Positions 34,839 to 45,541 of a DNA stretch of 64,000 nt are shown here, piece after piece (the stretch's first letter is position 1; every line of letters begins with the position of its first letter). The notes beneath the pieces are model-generated. The model ran no database searches. It saw nothing but the letters and a program-made list of their open reading frames with translations, and was not told the DNA's origin. The position numbers and the translations under genes were made by a program. The stretch spans positions 1 through 64,000 of the IMG/VR virus record IMGVR_UViG_3300044641_007115; one strand, given 5' to 3'.

Positions 34839-34915
34839 TGGTAGCGGGAGTGGGAGTTGAACCCACCTAGTACAGCTTATGAGACTGTCGTGCGCACCCG
34901 CTCAGCTTTCCCGCA
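34839..34915 (-). tRNA. tRNA with CAT anticodon (Met/Ile2), atypical
   Basis: ACAGT-CTCATAA-GCTGT anticodon arm, GTGGG-TTCAACT-CCCAC T arm, U1xU72 mismatch, encoded CCA, weak D arm. Confidence 0.75.
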
Positions 34916-35898: not shown

Positions 35899-35952
35899 AA
35901 AGGAATCGTAACACGGTTTTGGCATTTTTCGTCCGGTCTACAATACAAGTAC

Positions 35953-36546
35953 ATGCAGAACACTCTAATCCCAATGGTCGTAGAACAGTCTCCGCGCGGT
36001 GAACGCTCCTACGACATCTATTCCCGTCTTCTCAAAGAGCACATCATTTTCCTTGGCACCGCCATCGACGACGACGTTGCCAATCTGGTCGTCGCACAGC
36101 TTCTTTTCCTTGCGGCGGAAGACCCGGACAAGGACATCAGCATGTACATCAATTCGCCGGGCGGATCGATCACGGCGGGCCTTGCTATTCTCGATACGAT
36201 GAATCTGGTCAAGCCCGACATCGTGACCTATTGCGTCGGTCAGGCCGCGTCGATGGGTGCTGTGTTGCTGGCGAACGGTGCCAAAGGGAAACGCTTTGCC
36301 TTGCCGCACGCACGCATCCTGATTCACCAGCCGTTGATGCGCGGACTCAGCGGACAGGCCAGCGACATCGACATTCACGCGAAAGAAATCTTGCGCATGC
36401 GCGAAATTCTCAACGGAATCTTAGCGACCAAGACCGGACAACCGCTCGAAAAGATCAGCGCGGACGTGGATCGCGACTACATCTTGGAAGCGGATGCCGC
36501 TGTCAAGTATGGCCTTGTGGACAAGGTGATCGAGAAACAGCCGTAA
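35953..36546 (+). CDS. clpP: ATP-dependent Clp protease proteolytic subunit
   Basis: [22 protein letters not shown] (Ser), IHQP (His), DRD (Asp): intact triad. Confidence 0.98.
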
Positions 36547-36548
36547 CG

Positions 36549-36583
36549 AAAAAAGCCCCGGTCGTAACCGGGGCTTTCGTTTT
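36549..36583. terminator. Bidirectional terminator
   Basis: aaaaaagccccgg..ccgggctttcgtttt. Confidence 0.75.
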
Positions 36584-37067
36584 ATACATCTGACATTGGA
36601 AGTGGTGACGGTGGAACAAAACTGGTATCGACCTGAAGACCGTAATCGCCCGGTGCGACATCATGAATGGACCCCGTGATTGTTGTAGGATTCGGTAAAA
36701 TCATGAACCCGATTTCGCCGTTCAACTCATAAGTGAAATCAAGAGAAGATGTTCCCGAACCAGACACATAAGAGAGTTCGACGATTGATGAATGCATATC
36801 ATCTTCAATATCCATCGTGATCGTCGGGACGCCCACAACAATGACCGGTTCGCTGTATTGAACCCGAAGCCGGAACGTATCGCCCGTTCTGTAGATACCC
36901 TTGTTATCGACAACGAAAACGTTACGAATGACCGCCGCGCCGGTGCGTCGATCAAGGGAACCGATGGTCACCAGAACTTCACCGGTGTCAGGATTCACCC
37001 ATCCTTTCGGGGTTGCAATCGCCTTCGGTGCCCACGACGGCGGATTCGATAGATTCCACAATGCCAT
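36582..37067 (-). CDS. Late structural protein with Ig-like domain
   Basis: MALW start; Y..GD.....V.YSE.V.V.G.P...SGSGT..L.F.Y; late promoter motif. Confidence 0.55.
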   Translation of the reverse strand: MALWNLSNPPSWAPKAIATPKGWVNPDTGEVLVTIGSLDRRTGAAVIRNVFVVDNKGIYRTGDTFRLRVQYSEPVIVVGVPTITMDIEDDMHSSIVELSYVSGSGTSSLDFTYELNGEIGFMILPNPTTITGSIHDVAPGDYGLQVDTSFVPPSPLPMSDV

Positions 37068-37116
37068 AACCTGTATTTAGGTCATCCCCATCCCGGAGGG
37101 ACGACTAAATCTTGGT

Positions 37117-37764
37117 GTGACTAGATCCCAAGCCGGGCGGCTAGGTGCCGCAATTACAGCCCACCGATTCCGACAGGAAGCCATCAGATCATACTACGAA
37201 TCTCCCAATCGATGTTTGCATTGTGATGAAATCATCCATGTTTCAGAAGGCGCGCGGGTCGCAGAGATTCGAAAAAAGAAGTTTTGTGGGCAATCTTGTT
37301 CAGCAATCTACAACAACACACGACGGAATCGACAGACACCTACATGTCAAGTTTGCGGCACTCACGTCACCAAAGGATCAGAAAAGTTCTGTTCTGTAAC
37401 ATGTCACAAACAACACCGGCATACTGAATACATCCAAAGATGGAAAGCTGGATTGGAAGATGGCGTTAACGGTGGAGGAATGTCGATTAGCCCTACTATT
37501 CGGAAATATCTTTTCGAACAGAGGGGACCGGCTTGCTGGAAATGTGGATGGTCACAAGTGAACCCGGTCACAAATCGGGTTCCTCTTCAAGTAAATCATA
37601 TTGATGGTAACCCACTCAATAACAAAGAAGAGAACCTTGAACTCATCTGCCCGAATTGCCACAGTATTACTCCAAATTTCGGAGCATTGAATATGGGCAA
37701 CGGTCGAGAAGTTCGTCGCGCTCGATATCACCAAAAGAAAGTTGGAGCCGGAAGTGGCACTTGA
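37117..37764 (+). CDS. HNH endonuclease (free-standing, Zn-finger N-terminus)
   Basis: CWKCG...LQVNHIDGNPLNNKEENLELICPNCH; FCS..C repeats. Confidence 0.9.
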   Translation: MTRSQAGRLGAAITAHRFRQEAIRSYYESPNRCLHCDEIIHVSEGARVAEIRKKKFCGQSCSAIYNNTRRNRQTPTCQVCGTHVTKGSEKFCSVTCHKQHRHTEYIQRWKAGLEDGVNGGGMSISPTIRKYLFEQRGPACWKCGWSQVNPVTNRVPLQVNHIDGNPLNNKEENLELICPNCHSITPNFGALNMGNGREVRRARYHQKKVGAGSGT

Positions 37765-37819
37765 AGCCACATCATTCGACCTTACAAGGATCGCGCTCTG
37801 CCTCTTAAGCTATTCCGGC
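37743..37819 (-). tRNA. tRNA-Thr(UGU)
   Basis: GCCGGAA/TTCCGGC acceptor, CT-TGT-AA loop, TTCAAGT, CCA. Confidence 0.9.
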
Positions 37820-37832
37820 GTTGGTTGAATTT

Positions 37833-37908
37833 TGGAGCCGCTGGACGGTTACGATCCGTCGCCTAACCCTTACCAAAGGTTCGGTCTGCCGATTGATCCT
37901 ACAGCGGC
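37833..37908 (-). tRNA. tRNA-Thr(GGU)
   Basis: GCCGCTG/CAGCGGC, TT-GGT-AA loop, atypical T loop ATCGTAA, CCA. Confidence 0.85.
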
Positions 37909-37918
37909 GTATTTTGTT

Positions 37919-37994
37919 TGGAGCCGGTGACGACAAATTGAAGTCGTGACTGTGGGGTACGAATCCACTATTTTGCCACTTAAACTACACCGGC
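37919..37994 (-). tRNA. tRNA-Thr(CGU)
   Basis: GCCGGTG/CACCGGC, TT-CGT-AC loop, 8-nt T loop, CCA. Confidence 0.85.
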
Positions 37995-37997
37995 ATG

Positions 37998-38099
37998 TGG
38001 CGGGGAGAATCGGATTTGAACCAATGATAACCATCACAAAACGGCTGTTGCCAGCAAAAGGCATGCAACGGTGCCTTAACCAAGCTAGGCTATCTCCCC
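37998..38099 (-). tRNA. 102-nt class II tRNA-like gene (G73, Ser-like) with an expanded anticodon arm; identity unresolved
   Basis: GGGGAGA/TCTCCCC acceptor, normal D and T arms, variable stem, CCA; no canonical 7-nt anticodon loop. Confidence 0.65.
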
Positions 38100-38110
38100 A
38101 TCAGGCTTAA

Positions 38111-38160
38111 TGTCTCATATCGTAGACAATAACCGGGGTTACTGTACAAGATATGAGACA
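38111..38160. other. 50-nt intergenic hairpin
   Basis: tgtctcatatc/gatatgagaca perfect 11-bp arms, inner taacc/ggtta. Confidence 0.75.
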
Positions 38161-38167
38161 TCAAACT

Positions 38168-38245
38168 TGGCGGTCCTGACGGGATTCGAACCCGTGATCT
38201 TCACCGTGACAGGGTGACGGGGACGGCCAACTCCCCTACAAGACC
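38168..38245 (-). tRNA. tRNA-Asp(GUC)
   Basis: GGTCTTG/CAGGACC, CT-GTC-AC loop, GGTTCGAATCC, G73-CCA. Confidence 0.92.
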
Positions 38246-38246
38246 G

Positions 38247-38320
38247 TGGCGGGGCATACGGGAATCGAACCCGTGGTACACCATAGACAGTGGTGCCGTT
38301 TGCCACTAACGAAATGCCCC
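38247..38320 (-). tRNA. tRNA-Asp(GUC), second unrelated copy
   Basis: GGGGCAT/ATGCCCC, CT-GTC-TA loop, GGTTCGATTCC, G73-CCA. Confidence 0.88.
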
Positions 38321-38343
38321 AAAACTTGCGGAAGGAATGCACA

Positions 38344-38457
38344 CTGGCCGGTGTCGCTCCGACTAACCGTGGGAAGCATCGACTTTACAGTCGCCCCACA
38401 ACAACCGACTTTGGAGGAAGGTGCTCTTTCTTAAGCTAGAAAGTCGGCACCGGCCAG
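38344..38457 (-). ncRNA. 114-nt structured RNA with a tRNA-Trp-like core
   Basis: 10-bp terminal helix CTGGCCGGTG/CACCGGCCAG; internal TAGCTT..AGAGCA, CT-CCA-AA, GTGGG/CCCAC; CGACT-GTAA-AGTCG hairpin. Confidence 0.55.
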
Positions 38458-38488
38458 CGAAATTTCGGACAAGCAAAGAAAGTACAGA

Positions 38489-38564
38489 TCGACTAAGAAT
38501 TGGACTCGAACCAACTTCTCCGGGCGTGCGGCCCGGCGCTTTAACCATGTTAAGCTACATCTCC
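38489..38564 (-). pseudogene. Degenerate tRNA (loop CC-GCA-CG)
   Basis: Good D, anticodon and T arms, but 3' acceptor strand does not pair and no CCA. Confidence 0.6.
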
Positions 38565-38617
38565 GAATGGTGGGGACAGATAACCAATCTGAGGCGGCTT
38601 GTCCTGAAAACTATTAT

Positions 38618-38842
38618 GACACGAAGCAAAGCCGTTCAAAGCAAGAACCAACTATCAGAAGCATCAAAGTGCCTGTCAAATGTCACCGTACAGGTCTGAC
38701 GGTCACCCGGTTGCCCGGTAGCGAAGCATTCCCCATAACACGGGGAAGACCGAACTAGTAAGCCCGGCCATCTGTTTGTAACCAGATAATCTTCCGACTT
38801 CGGCTTAGAACGGCTCTGCCGGAAGTACTTATACTTCGTATC
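38618..38842 (-). ncRNA. ~225-nt highly structured RNA of unknown class
   Basis: 12-bp closing helix GCAGAGCCGTTC/GAACGGCTTTGC; four inner hairpins including CCGG-GCAA-CCGG and TTCCCC/GGGGAA. Confidence 0.6.
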
Positions 38843-38851
38843 GTGGAATCT

Positions 38852-38931
38852 TGGTGGAACACGTGGGAATTGAACCCACCTGAATATCCTCATTGCGAAT
38901 GAGGCGACCACCCCATGCAGTCCCGTGCCCC
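38852..38931 (-). tRNA. tRNA-Ala(CGC)
   Basis: GGGGCAC/GTGTTCC with G3:U70, TT-CGC-AA loop, CCA. Confidence 0.85.
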
Positions 38932-38961
38932 GTTTTGGTAAACCGAGATTCCTTCCGCAAA

Positions 38962-38981
38962 CTATTCACTTGTCAAAGAAC
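38962..38981 (-). promoter_or_regulatory. rrn-type boxA-like antitermination motif
   Basis: GTTCTTTGACAAGTGAATAG in spacer between tRNA genes. Confidence 0.5.
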
Positions 38982-39024
38982 ACTTGTGATCGTACAACAC
39001 AGAAAACTTGTGATCGTCCGATCT

Positions 39025-39104
39025 TGGTGGAACACGTGGGAATCGAACCCACCTGAATATCTTCGATGCCATCGAAGCGGCCACCCCATGCAGCCCCGTG
39101 CCCC
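39025..39104 (-). tRNA. tRNA-Ala(GGC)
   Basis: Near-identical to Ala(CGC) except anticodon arm; G3:U70; CCA. Confidence 0.85.
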
Positions 39105-39113
39105 ATTTGAATT

Positions 39114-39190
39114 TGGTGGACCGTGCCGGGATCGAACCGGCTACCTTCCGCTTGCAAGGCGGATGCTCTCCCAAAATGAGCTAACGGCCC
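39114..39190 (-). tRNA. tRNA-Ala(UGC)
   Basis: GGGCCGT/ACGGTCC G3:U70, CT-TGC-AA loop, canonical arms, CCA. Confidence 0.95.
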
Positions 39191-39239
39191 AAATGGACAA
39201 AACCTAAAATGACTTGAGGGGAGAAAGTCTGTGGGCGGC

Positions 39240-39362
39240 TTAAGCCGCTGCTGCCGTAGCAGCGATGGTATCGATCACAATATCGATGCCACCGGCAAAC
39301 GCAGTCGCGCGCACAGACATCGTAGTGGCTGTGTGCGTTCGAGTTGTGAAGGTTGCCTTCAT
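39240..39362 (-). CDS. 40-aa Ala/Thr-rich leader peptide upstream of the tRNA operon (not in ORF track)
   Basis: MKATFTTRTHTATTMSVRATAFAGGIDIVIDTIAATAAAA*; GAGG 10 nt before ATG; hairpin GCGGC-TTAA-GCCGC over the stop. Confidence 0.55.
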   Translation of the reverse strand: MKATFTTRTHTATTMSVRATAFAGGIDIVIDTIAATAAAA

Positions 39363-39381
39363 TGGTGCGTTGCCTCATCTC

Positions 39382-39411
39382 TATTTATACATACCGCCGG
39401 GCGGATGTCAA
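39382..39411 (-). promoter_or_regulatory. tRNA operon promoter: TTGACA -35 with TATAAA -10 overlapping a T4 late TATAAATA
   Basis: ttgacatccgcccggcggtatgtataaata on the - strand. Confidence 0.7.
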
Positions 39412-39731
39412 CATTTTTCGAAAGAAAAATCGGAAATTTTCAATCCCCACCGGATCGGGAACTCTTGATGCATCATGTCTCTCAGGTTGTTCCCAAAAAC
39501 TTCCTTGGTGGCTTTCCGCGCGGTTTCGATGTCCGCGCCTTGTGCAACATGCATGTCGCGCATCTTGACGGACCAGAAATCCAATGTGCGCTGAATGATT
39601 CCGATAGCCTGTTCCCGGCTGGTGCAAAGGGATTCTTCTTCTTGCTCCCACGACATCGATTCACCGGTCACGGCATCCGTGTGGAACCATTTTTGGGATG
39701 CAACAACTTGCGCGGCGTCTCTGATAGTCAT
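39408..39731 (-). CDS. Hypothetical protein
   Basis: Protein-like ORF after the SprT gene. Confidence 0.5.
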   Translation of the reverse strand: MTIRDAAQVVASQKWFHTDAVTGESMSWEQEEESLCTSREQAIGIIQRTLDFWSVKMRDMHVAQGADIETARKATKEVFGNNLRDMMHQEFPIRWGLKISDFSFEKC

Positions 39732-39743
39732 GCGACCATGCTA

Positions 39744-40649
39744 TCACGATCCGATGACTTTGGAATTCCACTTTCCGAAATCCCGGCCACCGATAGTCGG
39801 AGCGGGTTTGTTCGGGTTGAAGAAGTCGTCCTTGGCCTTCTGATCGACGGCTCTTTCATCGGTCGTGTTCATCGTCCACAACTGAACAGCACTCTTCCGA
39901 TCCGTCAACAGCATGTCTTTCGTCTTGTCACTTACGCCGTAACGGGTCGCCGGTAATGTCCGGCTGAGTGTAATCCGGGTTGCCAGTTTCGATACCGGGA
40001 CGAAAAACGCGGTGATCTCCATGTCGTACTTGATCCAAAGATGACGCAAGGTCGCTTTGAGTTCATTGGCCTTGGCTTTCCATGTCGGCATCAGAACAGA
40101 GTATTGCATGTCGCTCCGGTTGGTATCGATATAGGTCACCAATACACATGGCTTGCCGGTCACATGTTGCATTTCTTCCGGGCTAATCGTGTCCGACACC
40201 GGCACCGGACGACCGAACTCTTTGGATACAGAATGTACTTTCGTCAAGAAGCGTGATCCGTGGTTCTCGAACCAATACCCCTGTGTGATGAGGTACGCAT
40301 GGACCATTTCATGCAGAAGAATGCCGTCCCACTTCCATTCCGGTCGCACCGGCACAGCCGTGCTCATGGTGATCTTCAGGTCATAGACTTCGCCGTTCAT
40401 CTTCGTGTACGCGGCCAGCGAACCAGACGGTTTTCGTTCGCCCGGTGCTAGTTTGAATTTGCCAGTCGTTGTACCAGATACCGCCTTGCCAGTCTTTCCC
40501 CACACCACCGGCATATTGTTCGGGATCGCGCTATCGAAGAACAGCTTGTTGAACAATTGGAACTTCTTCACCAACGGATAGTCTTTGAATGGCAAGACTT
40601 CATCGCTAGTGTGTCCTTCCCGGATGAAATGTCGATATGTCTTGAACAC
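39744..40649 (-). CDS. SprT-like zinc metalloprotease with capsid-targeting-like N-terminus
   Basis: ILLHEMVHAY...HG..F; LFN..FF...P; start MFKTYRHFIRE. Confidence 0.8.
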   Translation of the reverse strand: MFKTYRHFIREGHTSDEVLPFKDYPLVKKFQLFNKLFFDSAIPNNMPVVWGKTGKAVSGTTTGKFKLAPGERKPSGSLAAYTKMNGEVYDLKITMSTAVPVRPEWKWDGILLHEMVHAYLITQGYWFENHGSRFLTKVHSVSKEFGRPVPVSDTISPEEMQHVTGKPCVLVTYIDTNRSDMQYSVLMPTWKAKANELKATLRHLWIKYDMEITAFFVPVSKLATRITLSRTLPATRYGVSDKTKDMLLTDRKSAVQLWTMNTTDERAVDQKAKDDFFNPNKPAPTIGGRDFGKWNSKVIGS

Positions 40650-40725
40650 TCAGATATTTAGGATGACACAGAAAATTTGAGTGCAATCGGTTTCCATCGG
40701 TTTCATCGGGTTCTAAATACATGTC

Positions 40726-41124
40726 ATGCCAGCAGGAAAAACCAATTCGTATAGCGATTCCGTCCTCAATCTTCTACGCGGATCAAATGTCACCGCGTTT
40801 TCTCCCTACGTGGGACTGATGTCGGTCGCTCCAACCGACGACAATTCGACAGGAACCGAACTGAGTGGAAGCGGCTACAGTCGGCAAAGTATCACTTTCG
40901 GCGCTCCTGCCGATGAAGGAACCGGCGGACGCAAAGTCTCAAACACGAACGTGATTCGTTTTGGCCCGGCTTCTGCCAATTGGAGTGCAGCGGTTGCTTT
41001 CGGCATCTATGATGCGGCGTCCAGCGGCAATCTTCGATATTGGGGAACCATGACTACTGTCACCGTGGTGTCGAGTTCATCCCTTGAAATCGCTATTGGA
41101 GACTTGTCAGTCGTCGAAGACTAA
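40726..41124 (+). CDS. Small virion structural protein (paralog of 6906/7305)
   Basis: PYVGL....PTD...GTELSG.GY.RQ...F...GIYDAA..GNL. Confidence 0.7.
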   Translation: MPAGKTNSYSDSVLNLLRGSNVTAFSPYVGLMSVAPTDDNSTGTELSGSGYSRQSITFGAPADEGTGGRKVSNTNVIRFGPASANWSAAVAFGIYDAASSGNLRYWGTMTTVTVVSSSSLEIAIGDLSVVED

Positions 41125-41145
41125 CGAAGCAAGGAGCGCAAAAGA

Positions 41146-41556
41146 ATGAGTAAAGCAAATACCTTAGAGAATGATGTACTCCGAAAAGTTTTCAACAATG
41201 TCGAACCCGCGTGGGATGGGGTCGGAAACCTTTTCGTGAGTTTGCATACCGGCGATCCCGGCGATGCTGGCAATCAAACGACGAATGAAGCCAACTACAC
41301 CAGTTATGCGCGGGTGTCAGTTGCAAGAGACAATACCGGTTGGACTGTTGTCGGTGACACATCCAGCAACACAGCAGCTATCAATTTCCCCCAATGCACT
41401 GGTGGATCAAACACCATTACGCATGTTGGTGTTGGAACGGCAAATTCTGGCGCGGGCACTCTTCTTTACAAGGGAGCACTAAATGCTAGCTTGGCGGTTT
41501 CGAATCTTATCACGCCAAGTTTTCCGATCAGTGCTTTGCAAATCATCGAGGACTAA
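41146..41556 (+). CDS. Small virion structural protein (paralog)
   Basis: LEND.L; LHT.DPGDAG.Q.TNE..Y..YARV; FPQCTGG..TITH.G.G. Confidence 0.7.
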   Translation: MSKANTLENDVLRKVFNNVEPAWDGVGNLFVSLHTGDPGDAGNQTTNEANYTSYARVSVARDNTGWTVVGDTSSNTAAINFPQCTGGSNTITHVGVGTANSGAGTLLYKGALNASLAVSNLITPSFPISALQIIED

Positions 41557-41559
41557 TTC

Positions 41560-42420
41560 ATGTCGTTCACTTCTATCGACAACGTTGTCAATGCAATCAG
41601 TACCAATGGCACTTTCATCAGACTGCCGTTTTACAAGATCACCGGCGCTGGTGCTTATACTGCCAGCCGTGGATATTCTTTCTTTCAGTTAGCCGGTCAA
41701 CCGGCGGCTGGTTCGTATTCAGGAACCGCGTTGACATCTGTACAGATGACAAGCGCGACCCAAGGCGCACTTCCTTTGAATGCCGCCGTCGCTCCTGCTA
41801 CCCGACATTTGCTGAATTGGGGAACAGTAACCGGTGTCGCAACAGGTGTACCATCCACATTGATGTTGGTGGACTTTCTGTTATACTACCCGACTGTCAA
41901 CGCCAACACCACTTCACCGAATACACTTACGAACAGCGCATCTTTGCCCCGGTATACGACCGGTGATGGTGTCATGATGATGTTGGAAGTGACCGCTGCA
42001 TTGGGAGCGACAGCATCCAACGTAACAGTGTCCTACACAAATCAAGCTGGCACCGCCTCAAGAACAACTCCAGCGACCGCGATGACGGTTTCACAGATTA
42101 TTAGTGGCATCGGACATACGGGTGTTGCTCCATTACACCTTCCTCTTCAGGGGACGGATTCCGGGGTACGCTCCATCCAAACCATCACTTTCAGCGCCGC
42201 TATGGGCGCGGGTTCGGCTGTTTCGGCTGTGTTGTATCGTCCACTAGCAACGATACCACTCACTACAATCGGTGTGATGACAGAGCGTGATTTCCTCTAT
42301 CAATTGCCATCATTGCCCAAGATCGAAGATGGTGCTTGCCTTGGATTCCTGTATTTCACCGGTGCCGCTACCGTTGCATCTACGCCCTTTACCGGGTATC
42401 TCGATTACGCTTGGAACTAA
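41560..42420 (+). CDS. Virion structural protein
   Basis: L.D.L..Y; LPRY..G.GV; YTNQAG...RT; LPLQ..D.GV.SI; LP.I.DGACL pattern of phage appendage proteins. Confidence 0.6.
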   Translation: MSFTSIDNVVNAISTNGTFIRLPFYKITGAGAYTASRGYSFFQLAGQPAAGSYSGTALTSVQMTSATQGALPLNAAVAPATRHLLNWGTVTGVATGVPSTLMLVDFLLYYPTVNANTTSPNTLTNSASLPRYTTGDGVMMMLEVTAALGATASNVTVSYTNQAGTASRTTPATAMTVSQIISGIGHTGVAPLHLPLQGTDSGVRSIQTITFSAAMGAGSAVSAVLYRPLATIPLTTIGVMTERDFLYQLPSLPKIEDGACLGFLYFTGAATVASTPFTGYLDYAWN

Positions 42421-42425
42421 TCTGA

Positions 42426-43058
42426 ATGCTTCGACCTAACGGCCAGTTTTTCGCATCTTTTCCGATCCGCTTCACCGGCGGATCGGAATCTATTCTGCGT
42501 TCATCGTGGACCAAAAACGAACAACTGATCGCCGGTTTCAATGGCTCACCTAACTCCATTCCAGTTGGAAGAAGGGCAACAGCATTTGCATTAGCTCGAT
42601 CCGAAGGCGGCGTTTCTTGCTCTGTTCGAGGCATAGCATCGCTAGTCAGCGATTTGGGCGGAACTGGAGATGTTTCTGTTCAGATCAATGGCACCGCAAC
42701 CGTTACGAATGCGGCCTTGACCGGGTTTCGTTTTGGTGAAGCGACCATCACCGGCACCGCCACTATCGCCAATGCACCATTATCGGGAGCGGCGAACGTT
42801 GGTGCTAACATTCGAATTGGTTTCAACCCAAGCGCGGAAGATATTACTGGCAATCTTCTTGATGCGCAATTTGTCGAAACCGGTGTGTCTGTTCGACAAG
42901 CTCTTCGTTTGATTACCGCTATTTTGGCCGGAAAAGTCTCCGGGGCGGAAGGAACCACGGTCACTTTCCGAAATGTTGGCGACGACAAGAATCGAGTGGT
43001 CGCCACTGTCGATAGCAACGGAAATCGTACCACGATCACTTACGACCTCACCACCTAA
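42426..43058 (+). CDS. Virion structural protein
   Basis: C-terminal RQALRLI.A.LAGKVSG.....TFR...D.K.RV.ATVD.NGNRT. Confidence 0.6.
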   Translation: MLRPNGQFFASFPIRFTGGSESILRSSWTKNEQLIAGFNGSPNSIPVGRRATAFALARSEGGVSCSVRGIASLVSDLGGTGDVSVQINGTATVTNAALTGFRFGEATITGTATIANAPLSGAANVGANIRIGFNPSAEDITGNLLDAQFVETGVSVRQALRLITAILAGKVSGAEGTTVTFRNVGDDKNRVVATVDSNGNRTTITYDLTT

Positions 43059-44399
43059 ATGCCATATTTTGACCGGCAAGTATTCAACAAATACTTCACC
43101 CCGTACATCGTTCCACAAGAGGGGACGGGTAGTGCTGTTTTACTAAGAACCTTCAGCCGGTCACAAGCTCAAGTACAAGCAAGCCAAATTTACCGCCGGA
43201 ATTTGCAAAGTCTTTCGACTTCTCAGCTTCAAACGACACCGGTCTTGCTACAGTTTTCAGACGGGATTACTTCGGCGGATAGCGCGGCCACGATCACCCA
43301 AGCTGGTATCTATTTTTCCCGGCAAACCCGAACAAGTAGTAGCAGTCAGATCAAAATCGACAATCGATCTGTCCTGTTCAATCGGGCCATCACTTCAATC
43401 AGCAAAGGAACTCTATCGGTCAGCACCACCGCGACCTATTTCCGGGTGCTCAAGTCAGATGCACGCGGTAGTGTTACCATTTCAGCATCTTCAATCGACA
43501 GTCGTATTCTGACAGCGATTGGCAATTCGGCTGTCTCTTCAACGTTTCGCATCATCTGGTTCGCCAGCCTTCAAACACAAAGCCAATCGGTCGCCACCCT
43601 CACCGCATCGTTACGATTCTTCTTTGAAGCTATTGGAAATTCCAGTACCGCCATCAATGCCGCTCAGTTGTTTTTCAACCGACAACCACGGGCGACAGGT
43701 GCCGGTCAGACCACCATCACGGCAAGTTTGATCCAGTATCGCTCCGCGTCTTTCCTTGGAAAATCTGAGACACGATTGACACCTTTGGTGTTGATCCCGA
43801 CCGATATGGTTTCATTCGCGGATAGTCAAACTGATCTTGTCGCCAATCTGGTCATGCTACGGACGGCAACATCACAAGGTCGCAGCGAAGTCAAAACAAA
43901 CACCGTTCTGGTTCGTCCACTGAGCCTGAACACTAGTGGTCAGAGCCAAACACAGTTGTTGGCTACCGGCCTATACTTTGCCGATGTCTCTTCAAACGGA
44001 TCTTCCCGATTGACAGGGACGACCATGCTCGTTTTCCAAGCTGTTCCAAAAACAACTGGCGGATCAAGCACGTCAGTCTTTGGGAAAATCATTTGGAACG
44101 CCAATGTACAGACATCAGGTGCATCGAATATCGAATTGGGGTATACCTACATCTTTGAAAGAACAGCACAGGCTGTCAGTCGGAGTATTGCTCAATCGAA
44201 CTTCTACACCGTGGCAAACACCACGCTAAAGAGTCAAGCAAACAGCAACACATTTGCCGATTCTACCGTCATGCTGCCTAGCGGCCAGATGGTCAGCCGG
44301 GGACGTAGTGCGATGAAGAGAGAGTCCAATAACGTGATTTTCTTGGGCAACATCAACAACTCTTCGGTCCACATCGGAAACAAGATCGCCATCAGCTAA
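43059..44399 (+). CDS. Ser/Thr-rich repetitive beta-structured virion protein
   Basis: Low-complexity ~20-aa beta repeats. Confidence 0.55.
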   Translation: MPYFDRQVFNKYFTPYIVPQEGTGSAVLLRTFSRSQAQVQASQIYRRNLQSLSTSQLQTTPVLLQFSDGITSADSAATITQAGIYFSRQTRTSSSSQIKIDNRSVLFNRAITSISKGTLSVSTTATYFRVLKSDARGSVTISASSIDSRILTAIGNSAVSSTFRIIWFASLQTQSQSVATLTASLRFFFEAIGNSSTAINAAQLFFNRQPRATGAGQTTITASLIQYRSASFLGKSETRLTPLVLIPTDMVSFADSQTDLVANLVMLRTATSQGRSEVKTNTVLVRPLSLNTSGQSQTQLLATGLYFADVSSNGSSRLTGTTMLVFQAVPKTTGGSSTSVFGKIIWNANVQTSGASNIELGYTYIFERTAQAVSRSIAQSNFYTVANTTLKSQANSNTFADSTVMLPSGQMVSRGRSAMKRESNNVIFLGNINNSSVHIGNKIAIS

Positions 44400-44408
44400 A
44401 TACTCGAC

Positions 44409-44678
44409 ATGCCGGACAATTTTGCCGTTTTCAAAACCAATCTTGAGTCGCCCGCGACGAACGCATACTTGGTCGCCCCGAACGACAGTGCCGATCTGCC
44501 TGTCACGACTAGAGCGCTCATGGTCAATGCGGACGGTAGCGTCAAAATGGAATTCGCCAAAGATCCATCTGGATCATTCGTGACGATTGCGCTGAAAGCT
44601 GGTCAAACCTACCCATTCCGTATTCGAAAAATCTATTCGAACGGCACCAACGCAACTGGTATCACAGCACTGTACTAG
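44409..44678 (+). CDS. Head-spike base protein (RcGTA Rcc01079-like)
   Basis: ESPA..A..V.PNDS.DL...TRAL.V...G.V......G..P.R..KI...GT.ATGI.AL. Confidence 0.7.
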   Translation: MPDNFAVFKTNLESPATNAYLVAPNDSADLPVTTRALMVNADGSVKMEFAKDPSGSFVTIALKAGQTYPFRIRKIYSNGTNATGITALY

Positions 44679-44797
44679 TAGTCGGTCACGCGGCGGATCA
44701 TGGCGGCAACCCGGCGGCGCTGATTCACCTTACCAACGTGCATCACAATCGCGGCGATTGCAAGCAAAAACAACAACAACAAACTGTAGTTCATCAT
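44675..44797 (-). CDS. 40-aa single-TM peptide (not in ORF track)
   Basis: MMNYSLLLLFLLAIAAIVMHVGKVNQRRRVAAMIRRVTDY*; ATG 6 nt after a TTGACA-N17-TATACT promoter. Confidence 0.55.
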   Translation of the reverse strand: MMNYSLLLLFLLAIAAIVMHVGKVNQRRRVAAMIRRVTDY

Positions 44798-44863
44798 AGT
44801 TCTAGTATAGAAGTTTTGTACCTATATGTCAATAGGTCCCTGTGGAAAACTTCCAAGAGAAAC

Positions 44864-44890
44864 AAAAACGCCGGACCCGAAGGTCCGGCA
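44864..44890 (-). terminator. tmRNA terminator
   Basis: gccggacc-ttcg-ggtccggc gtttttgttt. Confidence 0.85.
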
Positions 44891-45190
44891 TTCTTGCGAA
44901 GGTCTTTCTTTAACAAGGCACCCTCAGTTCCCCGGATGGGTGCAATTAAGCAGCCATCGCCAGAACATTGCTGTTGGCAGTTATTGTTTTACGCTGTTAC
45001 CCGAATCCGCTCATAAAACTTCATCGGTTTCGGTAGTCGTCTACCGGTCCACTCCACTTTCCCAACTCACTGCCAATCGAATTCCGGGACGCCCCCGTAT
45101 GGTGCCCCCTTTCGAGAGCGTGTTTTGGTGGAGGCGGCGGGAGTCGAACCCGCGTCTTGCCAGCGTCAGAATCGGATCATCGCGGACAAC
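44890..45190 (-). ncRNA. ssrA: Circularly permuted two-piece tmRNA (acceptor piece ~45188-45126, 29-nt intervening segment, coding piece from 45096); tag ANSNVLAMAA at 44978-44946
   Basis: GCGGGTTCGACTCCCGC-CGCCTCC-ACCA precedes GGGGGCG; 7-bp acceptor with G3:U70; helix 2 pairs across pieces; ATAACT-GCC resume context. Confidence 0.92.
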
Positions 45191-45196
45191 TCTAAT

Positions 45197-45541
45197 TTAG
45201 CACACCACAGAATTTGATGCAAGCTGTTCTTCGTCGGACATGGCAGCAAATTTCTGCGGAGTTGGACCACCGAAGGGCGGCGTCAACATGGACTTCAGCA
45301 AGGCTTCGCGCACGTTCCGGCCCCGGAACATGTTGTTCGCACCTTGCCCCGGTTCCAGCCGGGCGACAGTGGTGCCGGTCGCATCGGTTTCGATAGACGG
45401 CCAATCACTGTCAATCCAATCGAGCATGTCATCGGCGGTGATGTTGCGCTCCGCATGTTTGACATATTTCGACGGATCGAACTGCCCGGCTGGAATCCAT
45501 ACTTTATGGTCGGGGCGGTCGATCAGACTGACTTCGTACAT
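45197..45541 (-). CDS. Hypothetical protein (start MYEVSLID)
   Basis: ATG overlaps upstream TGA; longer ORF call is shadowed by 45541..45909. Confidence 0.55.
   Translation of the reverse strand: MYEVSLIDRPDHKVWIPAGQFDPSKYVKHAERNITADDMLDWIDSDWPSIETDATGTTVARLEPGQGANNMFRGRNVREALLKSMLTPPFGGPTPQKFAAMSDEEQLASNSVVC

What the first reader, a model, noticed from the sequence alone, without database searches (positions are those of the whole stretch)
35953..45190. Possible phage tag-and-degrade module: tmRNA degron plus its own ClpP
Seen: an intact clpP (Ser-His-Asp triad) with its own TACAAT box and terminator, and within about 9 kb a tmRNA whose tag ends in -MAA. Established: C-terminal AA ssrA tags are ClpXP/ClpAP substrates. 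Inference: the phage supplies both the rescue tag and the protease barrel, keeping ribosome rescue and proteolysis working if host tmRNA or ClpP is attacked or saturated, or redirecting host ClpX. No smpB or clpX is visible in this window.
Basis: partly seen in the sequence, partly recalled or inferred. Interest (0 to 1): 0.7.

Follow-up and report, generated by a model that had tools for sequence, protein, structure and literature searches.

The report
Phage clpP and tmRNA, unlinked
A 224-kb T4-like lake phage really does carry an intact cellular-type ClpP protease gene and an intact two-piece tmRNA gene 8 kb apart, but they came from different sources, are transcribed separately and do not travel together across phages more than chance predicts, so they look like two ordinary auxiliary genes of large phages, not a dedicated tag-and-degrade module.

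Summary
Both features exist as described. clpP (35953-36546, +) passes the TIGR00493 clpP equivalog cut-off and has the Ser-His-Asp triad. The tmRNA (44855-45219, -) is a permuted two-piece gene with tag ANSNVLAMAA. Both are under purifying selection.

The window is the first 64 kb of a 224,490-bp T4-like lake phage with 40 tRNAs. The whole genome has no smpB, clpX, other AAA_2 Clp ATPase or clpS. It has its own gp21-type prohead protease, so ClpP is not the head protease.

The "module" reading is not supported:
- The genes lie on opposite strands with their own terminators, separated by a tRNA array and a cassette that varies between sister species.
- ClpP is of Acidobacteriota type (77-84% identity, shared one-residue insertion). 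Acidobacteriota have only one-piece tmRNA.
- Four of the five nearest cultured relatives carry a permuted tmRNA and none carries ClpP.
- Among large viral records, tmRNA occurs in 12/26 with ClpP and 7/17 without (p = 0.50). Spacing is not closer than random (p = 0.45).

Most likely these are two independently acquired translation and proteostasis helpers that depend on host SmpB and host ClpX/ClpA. A pathway-level link remains plausible but untested. Phage ClpP and phage two-piece tmRNA are each already known.

The parts
34839..34915 (-). tRNA-Met (CAT), upstream of clpP; same position in relatives L547 and L549
   Evidence: ARAGORN
35939..35944 (+). TACAAT hexamer 8 nt before the clpP ATG; conserved in the sister species, but no proper -35 and no SD; promoter role unproven
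   Evidence: not called by the scan
35953..36546 (+). [quoted passage not shown]
   Evidence: 43 synonymous against 1 non-synonymous codon difference to L003
36552..36577 (.). GC-rich hairpin between convergent clpP and ORF 36582-37067: terminator
36582..37067 (-). ORF of 161 aa, unknown function (phrog_11617)
37117..37764 (+). HNH homing-endonuclease-like ORF, called in some near-identical contigs and not in others
37743..39190 (-). tRNA array: Thr x3, one extra Rfam-only tRNA (38001-38099), Asp x2, Cys, Ala x3
39744..40649 (-). SprT-like metallopeptidase ORF (301 aa)
   Evidence: PF10263, 28.7 bits; syntenic in L547
40726..44678 (+). Variable cassette: two Gp80-like head-fibre genes, three unknown ORFs and a small tail-fibre-like ORF; replaced by about 1.5 kb in sister species L003-L005
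44855..45219 (-). Permuted (two-piece) tmRNA gene. 3' tRNA-like piece about 45165-45126 ending in CCA; 5' acceptor strand about 45096-45068; tag ORF 44978-44946 (ANSNVLAMAA, stop)
   Evidence: compensatory changes against L003
45194..45222 (-). Sigma-70-like promoter of the tmRNA (TTGCAT, 17 nt, TAAATT preceded by TG); the predicted start coincides with the Rfam model start at 45187
   Evidence: sequence; aligns with the promoter-like 5' part of RF01850
44862..44897 (-). Intrinsic terminator of the tmRNA (16-bp stem, T run)

Best explanation
These are two independent auxiliary genes of a large T4-like lake phage. They happen to feed the same host pathway.

tmRNA. It is inherited within the aquatic T4-like clade. 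It is transcribed from its own sigma-70-type promoter (inferred early). It is then processed into two pieces, charged by host AlaRS through G3:U70, and used with host SmpB to free ribosomes stalled on broken mRNAs. Rescue adds the tag AANSNVLAMAA.

clpP. It was captured separately from an Acidobacteriota-type bacterium, possibly the host lineage. It is inserted as a single-gene unit in the opposite orientation into a minus-strand block of tRNA genes and small ORFs. The protein forms a normal ClpP barrel that can only degrade proteins by docking onto host ClpX/ClpA, because the phage encodes no Clp ATPase or adaptor. It therefore supplements or replaces host ClpP during infection.

Tagged proteins can end up in that barrel, but the two genes were acquired, are regulated and are retained independently, as part of the general translation and proteostasis toolkit of tRNA-rich large phages.

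Shown: gene integrity, purifying selection, separate transcription units, different origins, lack of statistical association. Inferred: timing, processing, partner use, substrates.
For: - Integrity and selection.
- No smpB, clpX, AAA_2 or clpS in 224 kb.
- A separate gp21 protease sits beside portal, scaffold and gp23 at 157.7 kb.
- Opposite strands, each gene with its own terminator.
- ClpP nests in the Acidobacteriota clade (SH-aLRT 99). The best named hits are Bryobacteraceae and Paludibaculum at 77-81%, and a bacterial contig reaches 84%. The HQPxMxGLxGQ insertion is shared with 81/82 acidobacterial loci.
- Seven sampled Acidobacteriota have only one-piece tmRNA.
- Mosig, HTVC008M, Melnitz and DLP_6 have a permuted tmRNA and no ClpP.
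- tmRNA occurs in 12/26 ClpP-bearing against 7/17 ClpP-free large viral records, p = 0.50. Distances in 18 records with both give p = 0.45.
- Phage ClpPs fall in at least five separate clades, which points to repeated capture.
- Literature: ClpP is patchy in jumbo phages (PMC7824862). tmRNA is found in 402 of 18,146 phage genomes, and two-piece forms are mostly aquatic (PMC9004378).
Against: - Within the phage's own lineage, ClpP, the tRNA array and the tmRNA stay together in two species about 84-92% identical in DNA.
- A few unrelated phages place the two genes very close together. G031 has ClpP 0.9 kb from the tmRNA on the same strand, flanked by DksA-like, GroES and GroEL genes. The G004/G013 lineage has a ClpP-family gene directly after the tmRNA. 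L014 has them 2 kb apart.
- The samples are small (26 against 17 records), many records are incomplete, and no expression or biochemical data exist.
- The ending -MAA in place of the usual -LAA is unexplained.
Confidence: 0.6

Rival explanations
1. Dedicated tag-and-degrade partnership. The phage supplies its own degron through the tmRNA and its own protease barrel. Nascent chains from ribosomes stalled on degraded host mRNAs are then tagged with a phage-specific -LAMAA tag and degraded by host ClpX plus phage ClpP. This recycles ribosomes and amino acids even if host tmRNA or ClpP is limiting.
For: - The two genes belong to the same biochemical pathway (established knowledge).
- Both are intact and conserved.
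- They are linked within the lineage.
- Close adjacency occurs in G031, in the G004/G013 lineage and in L014.
- Phage G carries a tmRNA plus ClpP-ClpX (PMC12484599).
- Buchholz et al. proposed that phage tmRNA tags host proteins so that amino acids can be recycled (PMC9004378).
Against: - Different donors for the two genes.
- Opposite strands and separate terminators.
- The four cultured relatives that have a tmRNA lack ClpP.
- No enrichment of tmRNA among ClpP-bearing phages (p = 0.50) and no general proximity (p = 0.45).
- No phage SmpB, ClpX or adaptor.
Confidence: 0.17
2. ClpP is mainly an anti-host or takeover device unrelated to trans-translation. By replacing or mixing with host ClpP, it changes which host proteins (regulators, defence proteins, antitoxins) are degraded. 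The tmRNA serves only ribosome rescue, or as a sensor of host translation state.
For: - The patchy distribution of ClpP in jumbo phages has been read as deployment against the host (PMC7824862).
- ClpP has been captured repeatedly and independently by unrelated large phages.
- clpP is a single-gene insert in the opposite orientation to its neighbours.
- An SprT-like peptidase lies nearby.
Against: No substrate or adaptor is identifiable in the genome. ClpP is highly similar to housekeeping ClpP and shows no obvious specialisation beyond the phylum-typical insertion. The idea cannot be told apart from simple capacity boosting with sequence data.
Confidence: 0.18
3. ClpP is the phage's prohead (head maturation) protease, as PHROGs labels ClpP-like phage proteins.
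For: The best PHROG hits are 'head maturation protease' families (phrog_94, 139.9 bits). Gp80-like head-fibre genes lie 4 kb away.
Against: It passes the cellular clpP equivalog cut-off, while NF045542 (ClpP-related head maturation protease) scores 70 bits against a cut-off of 120. The genome has a T4 gp21-type protease (PF03420, 127 bits) inside the portal-protease-scaffold-gp23 module at 153-161 kb. clpP lies among tRNA genes and genes of unknown function.
Confidence: 0.02
4. The tmRNA is a non-functional remnant (an attP-type fragment or a decaying pickup) or a decoy that blocks host trans-translation.
For: Prophages often carry ssrA fragments, and a CDS-less phage tmRNA inhibits host tmRNA (PMC11915505). 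No phage SmpB is present.
Against: The gene is full length, with both tRNA-like halves, G3:U70, CCA, a resume codon and a tag ORF. It has its own promoter and terminator. Compensatory changes occur in the T stem and the acceptor stem, and the tag ORF is 100% conserved between sister species. The phage is T4-like.
Confidence: 0.03

Closest known systems
Cellular ClpP (MEROPS S14; TIGR00493), specifically the ClpP of Acidobacteriota (Bryobacteraceae, Paludibaculum fermentans)
   Same: Full-length 197-aa fold, catalytic triad and N-terminal axial-loop motif. Shares the phylum-typical one-residue insertion after HQP. Identity is 77-84%.
   Different: Encoded by a phage, with no clpX, clpA or clpS anywhere in the genome. 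It stands alone on the opposite strand among tRNA genes. GC3 is already phage-like.
ClpP genes of jumbo phages (Bacillus phage G gp257-gp258 ClpP-ClpX; Agrobacterium phage Atu_ph07; Sinorhizobium phages Phosso and AP-J-162; megaphages LR756502 and LR756504)
   Same: A host-derived cellular-type ClpP in a large, tRNA-rich phage. Several of these phages also carry a tmRNA (PMC12484599, PMC6102473, PMC11242549, PMC7824862).
   Different: Those phages often bring their own ClpX, ClpA or ClpS. This phage brings none. Its ClpP belongs to a different clade, and the phage is a smaller (224 kb) T4-like virus.
Two-piece tmRNA of aquatic T4-like phages (Pelagibacter phages Mosig and HTVC008M, Methylophilales phage Melnitz; also Stenotrophomonas phage DLP_6)
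   Same: A permuted ssrA in phages whose gp23 is 55-59% identical to this one. It is a complete gene with its own promoter, and the phages carry no smpB (PMC9004378).
   Different: This one scores best with the beta-type model (76 bits, below its gathering score), whereas the pelagiphage genes are alpha-type. There is no glutamine riboswitch. The tag ends in -MAA. It is 12 kb from gp33 and not adjacent to it. Those relatives have no ClpP.
ClpP-related prohead proteases of tailed phages (NF045542; phrog_94 and others)
   Same: Same protease superfamily.
   Different: The score is far below that family's cut-off, the gene is not in the head module, and the phage has a gp21-type protease instead.

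Membership tests
[quoted passage not shown] | Profile score above the curated cut-off over the full length | tested here: met
   PF00574 271.9 bits (cut-off 20.2). TIGR00493 309.2 bits (cut-off 308.6, a narrow pass). PRK00277 315 bits (cut-off 249)..
[quoted passage not shown] | Ser-His-Asp catalytic triad | tested here: met
   S100, H125 and D175 align with the triad positions of solved ClpPs. They are invariant or nearly invariant in A1 and A4.
[quoted passage not shown] | N-terminal axial-loop motif and surface needed to dock an AAA+ partner | tested here: inconclusive
   The N-terminal segment [25 protein letters not shown] is nearly identical to that of solved ClpPs. The docking-pocket residues were judged only from my recollection of the E. 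coli numbering. No complex was predicted because the host is unknown.
[quoted passage not shown] | Works with a Clp ATPase (ClpX, ClpA or ClpC) | tested here: not met
   No TIGR00382 clpX, PF07724 AAA_2 or PF02617 ClpS in the 224-kb genome. A host partner has to be assumed.
[quoted passage not shown] | Tetradecameric barrel with peptidase activity | not testable with these tools
   Needs purified protein.
ClpP-related phage head maturation protease | Family profile above its cut-off, and position in the head module next to portal, scaffold and capsid genes | tested here: not met
   NF045542 scores 70.4 bits against a cut-off of 120. The head module, with its own PF03420 protease, lies about 120 kb away.
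tmRNA, permuted form (RF04321) | Covariance-model score above gathering, with permuted order (3' tRNA half, CCA, spacer, 5' half, tag ORF) | tested here: met
   98.1 bits against 47. ARAGORN reports 'Permuted'.
tmRNA, permuted form (RF04321) | Alanine identity: G3:U70, discriminator A73, CCA | tested here: met
   The 5' strand GGGGGCG pairs with CGCCTCC-A-CCA.
tmRNA, permuted form (RF04321) | Tag reading frame with an Ala resume codon and a hydrophobic ..AA C-terminus | tested here: met
   GCC AAC AGC AAT GTT CTG GCG ATG GCT GCT TAA. It is identical in the sister species. The ending -MAA is uncommon among the tags seen here.
tmRNA, permuted form (RF04321) | Structure kept by compensatory change | tested here: met
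   Own sequence against L003: T stem GCGGG/CCCGC becomes GCCGG/CCGGC, and the acceptor pair C6-G67 becomes U-A. Only two distinct sequences were available.
tmRNA, permuted form (RF04321) | SmpB partner, expression and processing into two pieces | not testable with these tools
   No smpB in the phage. No RNA run holds the sequence.
beta-type two-piece tmRNA (RF01850) | Score above the gathering threshold | tested here: not met
   76.1 bits against 84. It is the best of the clan but below the cut-off.
Functional gene module or operon (tmRNA plus ClpP) | Co-transcription or fixed adjacency | tested here: not met
   Opposite strands, separate terminators, and 8.3 kb of other genes that vary between species. 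Distances in 18 other phages range from 0.9 to 294 kb, combined p = 0.45.
Functional gene module or operon (tmRNA plus ClpP) | Co-occurrence across phages above the base rate | tested here: not met
   12/26 against 7/17, Fisher p = 0.50. Of the nearest cultured relatives, 4/5 have a tmRNA and 0/5 have ClpP.
Functional gene module or operon (tmRNA plus ClpP) | Common origin (co-transfer) | tested here: not met
   ClpP is of Acidobacteriota type, and the sampled Acidobacteriota have only one-piece tmRNA.

The most novel reading that the evidence does not exclude
Large tRNA-rich phages repeatedly assemble a 'rescue and recycle' kit. This phage's tmRNA writes a phage-specific -LAMAA degron, and the captured ClpP, docked on host ClpX, is tuned to clear it. 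Ribosomes and amino acids are then reclaimed from host mRNAs that the T4-like phage destroys. The tight ClpP-tmRNA-GroES/EL island in G031 and the tmRNA-ClpP-like pair in the G004/G013 lineage would be other versions of the same solution.
Probability: 0.12. Interest if true: 0.6.

Novelty: new member of a known kind. Interest (0 to 1): 0.3.

Why it matters
If a phage really coupled its own degron writer to its own protease, that would be a new layer of viral control over host protein quality control, and a route to test how phages reclaim ribosomes and amino acids. The evidence points to something more ordinary. Both tmRNA (about 30-45% of viral records of at least 100 kb sampled here) and cellular-type ClpP are common, independently acquired accessories of large phages. 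Seeing both in one genome is therefore expected.

Useful by-products:
- A clear Acidobacteriota signature in the ClpP hints at the host of an uncultured lake phage lineage.
- The permuted tmRNA type follows phage ancestry and not the present host.
- A base-rate table warns against reading function into the co-presence of two frequent auxiliary genes.

Tried and rejected
- DNA search against GenBank phages: no match.
- RNA evidence: no RNA run holds the region. DNA runs are lake-water metagenomes only.
- gp23-based search for related viral contigs: almost only short contigs, useless for presence/absence.
- Pfam on ten large ORFs at the start of the window: nothing informative.
- Tag-peptide pattern and a conserved tmRNA segment in metagenome contigs: no hits. 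In viral contigs the tag pattern found only the four ClpP-bearing contigs already known.
- Attempt to see whether the deeper relatives L547 and L549 have the tmRNA: their contigs end before that site.
- GroEL, GroES and DksA-like genes (as in G031): absent from this genome by tblastn.
- Host inference from the beta-like tmRNA type: rejected, because tmRNA type follows phage lineage. DLP_6 of Stenotrophomonas and Melnitz show the same mismatch (PMC9004378).
- Prohead-protease reading of ClpP: rejected.
- An early impression of strong co-occurrence (5/8 ClpP phages with tmRNA, several close pairs) did not survive controls. tmRNA is present in 7/17 ClpP-free large records and in only 7/18 of an unbiased ClpP-ascertained set.
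- No complex prediction was run, because the host ClpX is unknown and a heptamer-hexamer assembly exceeds the size limit.

Full report
WHAT IS THERE

The window is the first 64 kb of a 224,490-bp virus record that CheckV rates 96% complete. The phage is T4-like. gp32 and the gp33 late-transcription coactivator lie a few kb upstream of the region. A portal, gp21-type protease, scaffold and gp23 head module lies at 153-161 kb. The genome has 40 tRNA genes in three arrays plus one tmRNA. The sequence is held by many lake-water metagenomes and by no RNA run. By gp23, the nearest cultured phages (55-59% identity) are Pelagibacter phages Mosig and HTVC008M, Methylophilales phage Melnitz, Stenotrophomonas phage DLP_6 and cyanomyophages.

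The ORF at 35953-36546 (+) is a full-length cellular-type ClpP.
- PF00574 scores 271.9 bits and TIGR00493 scores 309.2 against a cut-off of 308.6.
- It is about 68% identical to solved ClpPs, and the triad falls at S100/H125/D175.
- A hairpin terminator follows at 36552-36577.
- The TACAAT hexamer exists at 35939-35944 and is conserved in the sister species. It sits only 8 nt before the ATG, without a usable -35 or a Shine-Dalgarno sequence, so I do not accept it as a demonstrated promoter.
- The genes on both sides are on the other strand, so clpP must nevertheless be its own transcription unit.

The tmRNA at 44855-45219 (-) is a permuted two-piece gene.
- RF04321 scores 98.1 bits. The beta-type model RF01850 is the best subtype at 76.1 bits, below its cut-off of 84.
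- It has G3:U70, A73-CCA and an Ala resume codon, and it encodes the tag ANSNVLAMAA.
- A sigma-70-like promoter lies at 45222-45194, and its predicted start coincides with the model start. A strong terminator lies at 44897-44862.

BOTH GENES ARE KEPT BY SELECTION

A sister species (L003-L005) is 84-92% identical in DNA across this region.
- clpP differs from it at 43 synonymous codons and 1 non-synonymous codon.
- The tmRNA shows compensatory changes in the T stem and the acceptor stem, while the tag ORF is unchanged.

WHAT ClpP IS NOT

It is not the head protease. The ClpP-related head-protease model scores 70 bits against a cut-off of 120. The phage has a gp21-type protease in its head module.

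WHAT THE PHAGE LACKS

The whole genome has no smpB, clpX, AAA_2-type Clp ATPase or clpS. It also has no GroEL, GroES or DksA-like gene. Both products must therefore work with host partners.

ORIGINS DIFFER

The closest named ClpP homologues, at 77-81% identity, are from Acidobacteriota: Bryobacteraceae, Bryobacter and Paludibaculum fermentans. A bacterial contig reaches 84%. In a tree, the phage ClpP sits inside the acidobacterial clade with SH-aLRT 99, away from all other phage ClpPs. It shares a one-residue insertion after HQP (HQPxMxGLxGQ) with 81 of 82 acidobacterial loci. That insertion is absent from proteobacterial-type ClpPs and from other phage ClpPs. Its GC3 is already phage-like, so the capture is not recent. 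Deeper relatives (88% and 87% ClpP identity) keep it in the same place.

All seven Acidobacteriota genomes sampled have a one-piece tmRNA and no permuted one. Their tags end in ..LALAA or ..FAYAA.

The permuted tmRNA, by contrast, is a trait of this phage clade. Mosig, HTVC008M, Melnitz and DLP_6 all have one. It is alpha-type in the first three and beta-type in DLP_6. As Buchholz et al. showed for Melnitz, the type follows phage ancestry and not the present host (PMC9004378). None of the five relatives has any ClpP-family gene.

IS THERE A MODULE?

Locally, no. The genes lie on opposite strands and each has its own terminator. Between them are an HNH endonuclease, ten or eleven tRNA genes, an SprT-like peptidase and a 4-kb cassette of head-fibre and tail-fibre-like genes. 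The sister species replaces that cassette with 1.5 kb.

Across phages, my first samples looked suggestive.
- tmRNA is present in phage G, which also has ClpX next to ClpP, and in Phosso, LR756504 and the 412-kb records G023/G024. That makes 5 of 8 complete ClpP-bearing phages.
- Several records found through their tmRNA have ClpP within 1-20 kb: G031, G005, G050 and G014.

Controls removed the signal.
- In 20 viral records of at least 100 kb sampled through tRNA patterns, tmRNA is present in 9. That includes 7 of the 17 records without cellular-type ClpP.
- In an unbiased ClpP-ascertained set of 18 records of at least 100 kb, tmRNA is present in 7.
- Pooled, the counts are 12/26 against 7/17, Fisher p = 0.50.
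- In 18 records with both genes, the spacing is what random placement gives (combined p = 0.45). Five of the 18 lie within 20 kb.

Phage ClpPs fall into at least five separate clades, so ClpP capture by large phages is frequent and independent. One is a Bacteroidota-like type with an N-terminal extension in megaphages.

WHAT REMAINS IN FAVOUR OF A LINK

By established biochemistry, ssrA-type tags ending in hydrophobic-Ala-Ala are ClpXP/ClpAP substrates, so the phage tag could be cleared in a barrel made of phage ClpP. A few phages show striking local arrangements.
- G031 has DksA-like, ClpP, two small ORFs, tmRNA, GroES and GroEL in that order on one strand.
- The G004/G013 lineage has a tmRNA directly upstream of a divergent ClpP-family gene that is not in a head module.

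These are worth a look in their own right, but they do not make the association general.

MOST LIKELY MECHANISM

The tmRNA is inherited vertically and transcribed by host RNA polymerase from a sigma-70-like promoter. With host SmpB, AlaRS and EF-Tu, it raises ribosome-rescue capacity while the T4-like phage shuts down and degrades host messages.

The ClpP was captured from an acidobacterial lineage, which may be the host. It supplements or replaces host ClpP on host ClpX/ClpA.

The two products touch the same pathway, but they were gained and are kept independently (confidence about 0.6). Rivals:
- a true tag-and-degrade partnership, about 0.17;
- an anti-host role for ClpP unrelated to tagging, about 0.18;
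- the prohead-protease and remnant/decoy readings, each about 0.02-0.03.

NOVELTY

Cellular-type ClpP in jumbo phages and two-piece tmRNA in aquatic T4-like phages are both published (PMC7824862, PMC6102473, PMC12484599, PMC9004378, PMC7162821). This is a new member of known kinds. Its added points of interest are the acidobacterial ClpP signature and the unusual -MAA tag ending.

Noticed in passing
L131 4423-8565 (record G031, 72-kb viral contig): A same-strand proteostasis island: DksA/TraR zinc-finger ORF, cellular-type ClpP, two small ORFs, beta-type permuted tmRNA, GroES, GroEL.
   Followed up: partly
L145 1324-2584 (records G004 and G013; also L102, L132): A permuted tmRNA (tag ANDAFYGEMRLAA) lies directly upstream, on the same strand, of a divergent ClpP-family gene (phrog_1827 'ATP-dependent protease', 190 bits). 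A primase-like gene follows, so this is not a head module.
   Followed up: partly
window 38001-38099 (-): Rfam calls an extra 99-nt tRNA (42.7 bits). ARAGORN finds it only with introns allowed, as tRNA-Lys(ttt) with an insert.
   Followed up: partly
window 37117-37764 (+): An HNH endonuclease ORF overlaps the end of the tRNA array. It is called in some otherwise near-identical contigs and not in others, so it may be a mobile homing endonuclease.
   Followed up: no
window 40660-44804: A 4.1-kb cassette (two Gp80-like head-fibre genes, three unknown ORFs, a tail-fibre-like ORF) is replaced by about 1.5 kb in sister species L003-L005.
   Followed up: partly
window 44804-44832 (-): A near-consensus sigma-70 promoter (TTGACA, 17 nt, TATACT) lies immediately downstream of the tmRNA terminator, in front of a 40-aa ORF.
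   Followed up: no
L010 9914-10594 (record G023, 412 kb) and relatives: Megaphage ClpPs have a Bacteroidota-like N-terminal extension. In G023, Asn aligns with the catalytic Asp.
   Followed up: no
L463 1470-3146 (Stenotrophomonas phage DLP_6): A beta-type permuted tmRNA (tag ANDDSFAPMAIAA) heads a tRNA array in a phage of a gammaproteobacterium. This is another case where tmRNA type does not match the host.
   Followed up: partly
L548 and L556 (acidobacterial genomes G076 and G075): The bacterial ClpPs closest to the phage's are the only ClpP in their genomes and are not next to clpX. By contrast, 75 of 82 acidobacterial loci have clpX downstream.
   Followed up: partly
viral contigs L022-L139: Permuted tmRNAs are widespread in IMG/VR contigs (about 70 of 118 pattern hits), with recurrent tag families such as ANSNQYALAA, ANENSYFEEFALAA and ANNSDYSSAQVALAA. 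A few end in -MAA: GAQVEMAMAA and ..EEAAMAA.
   Followed up: partly
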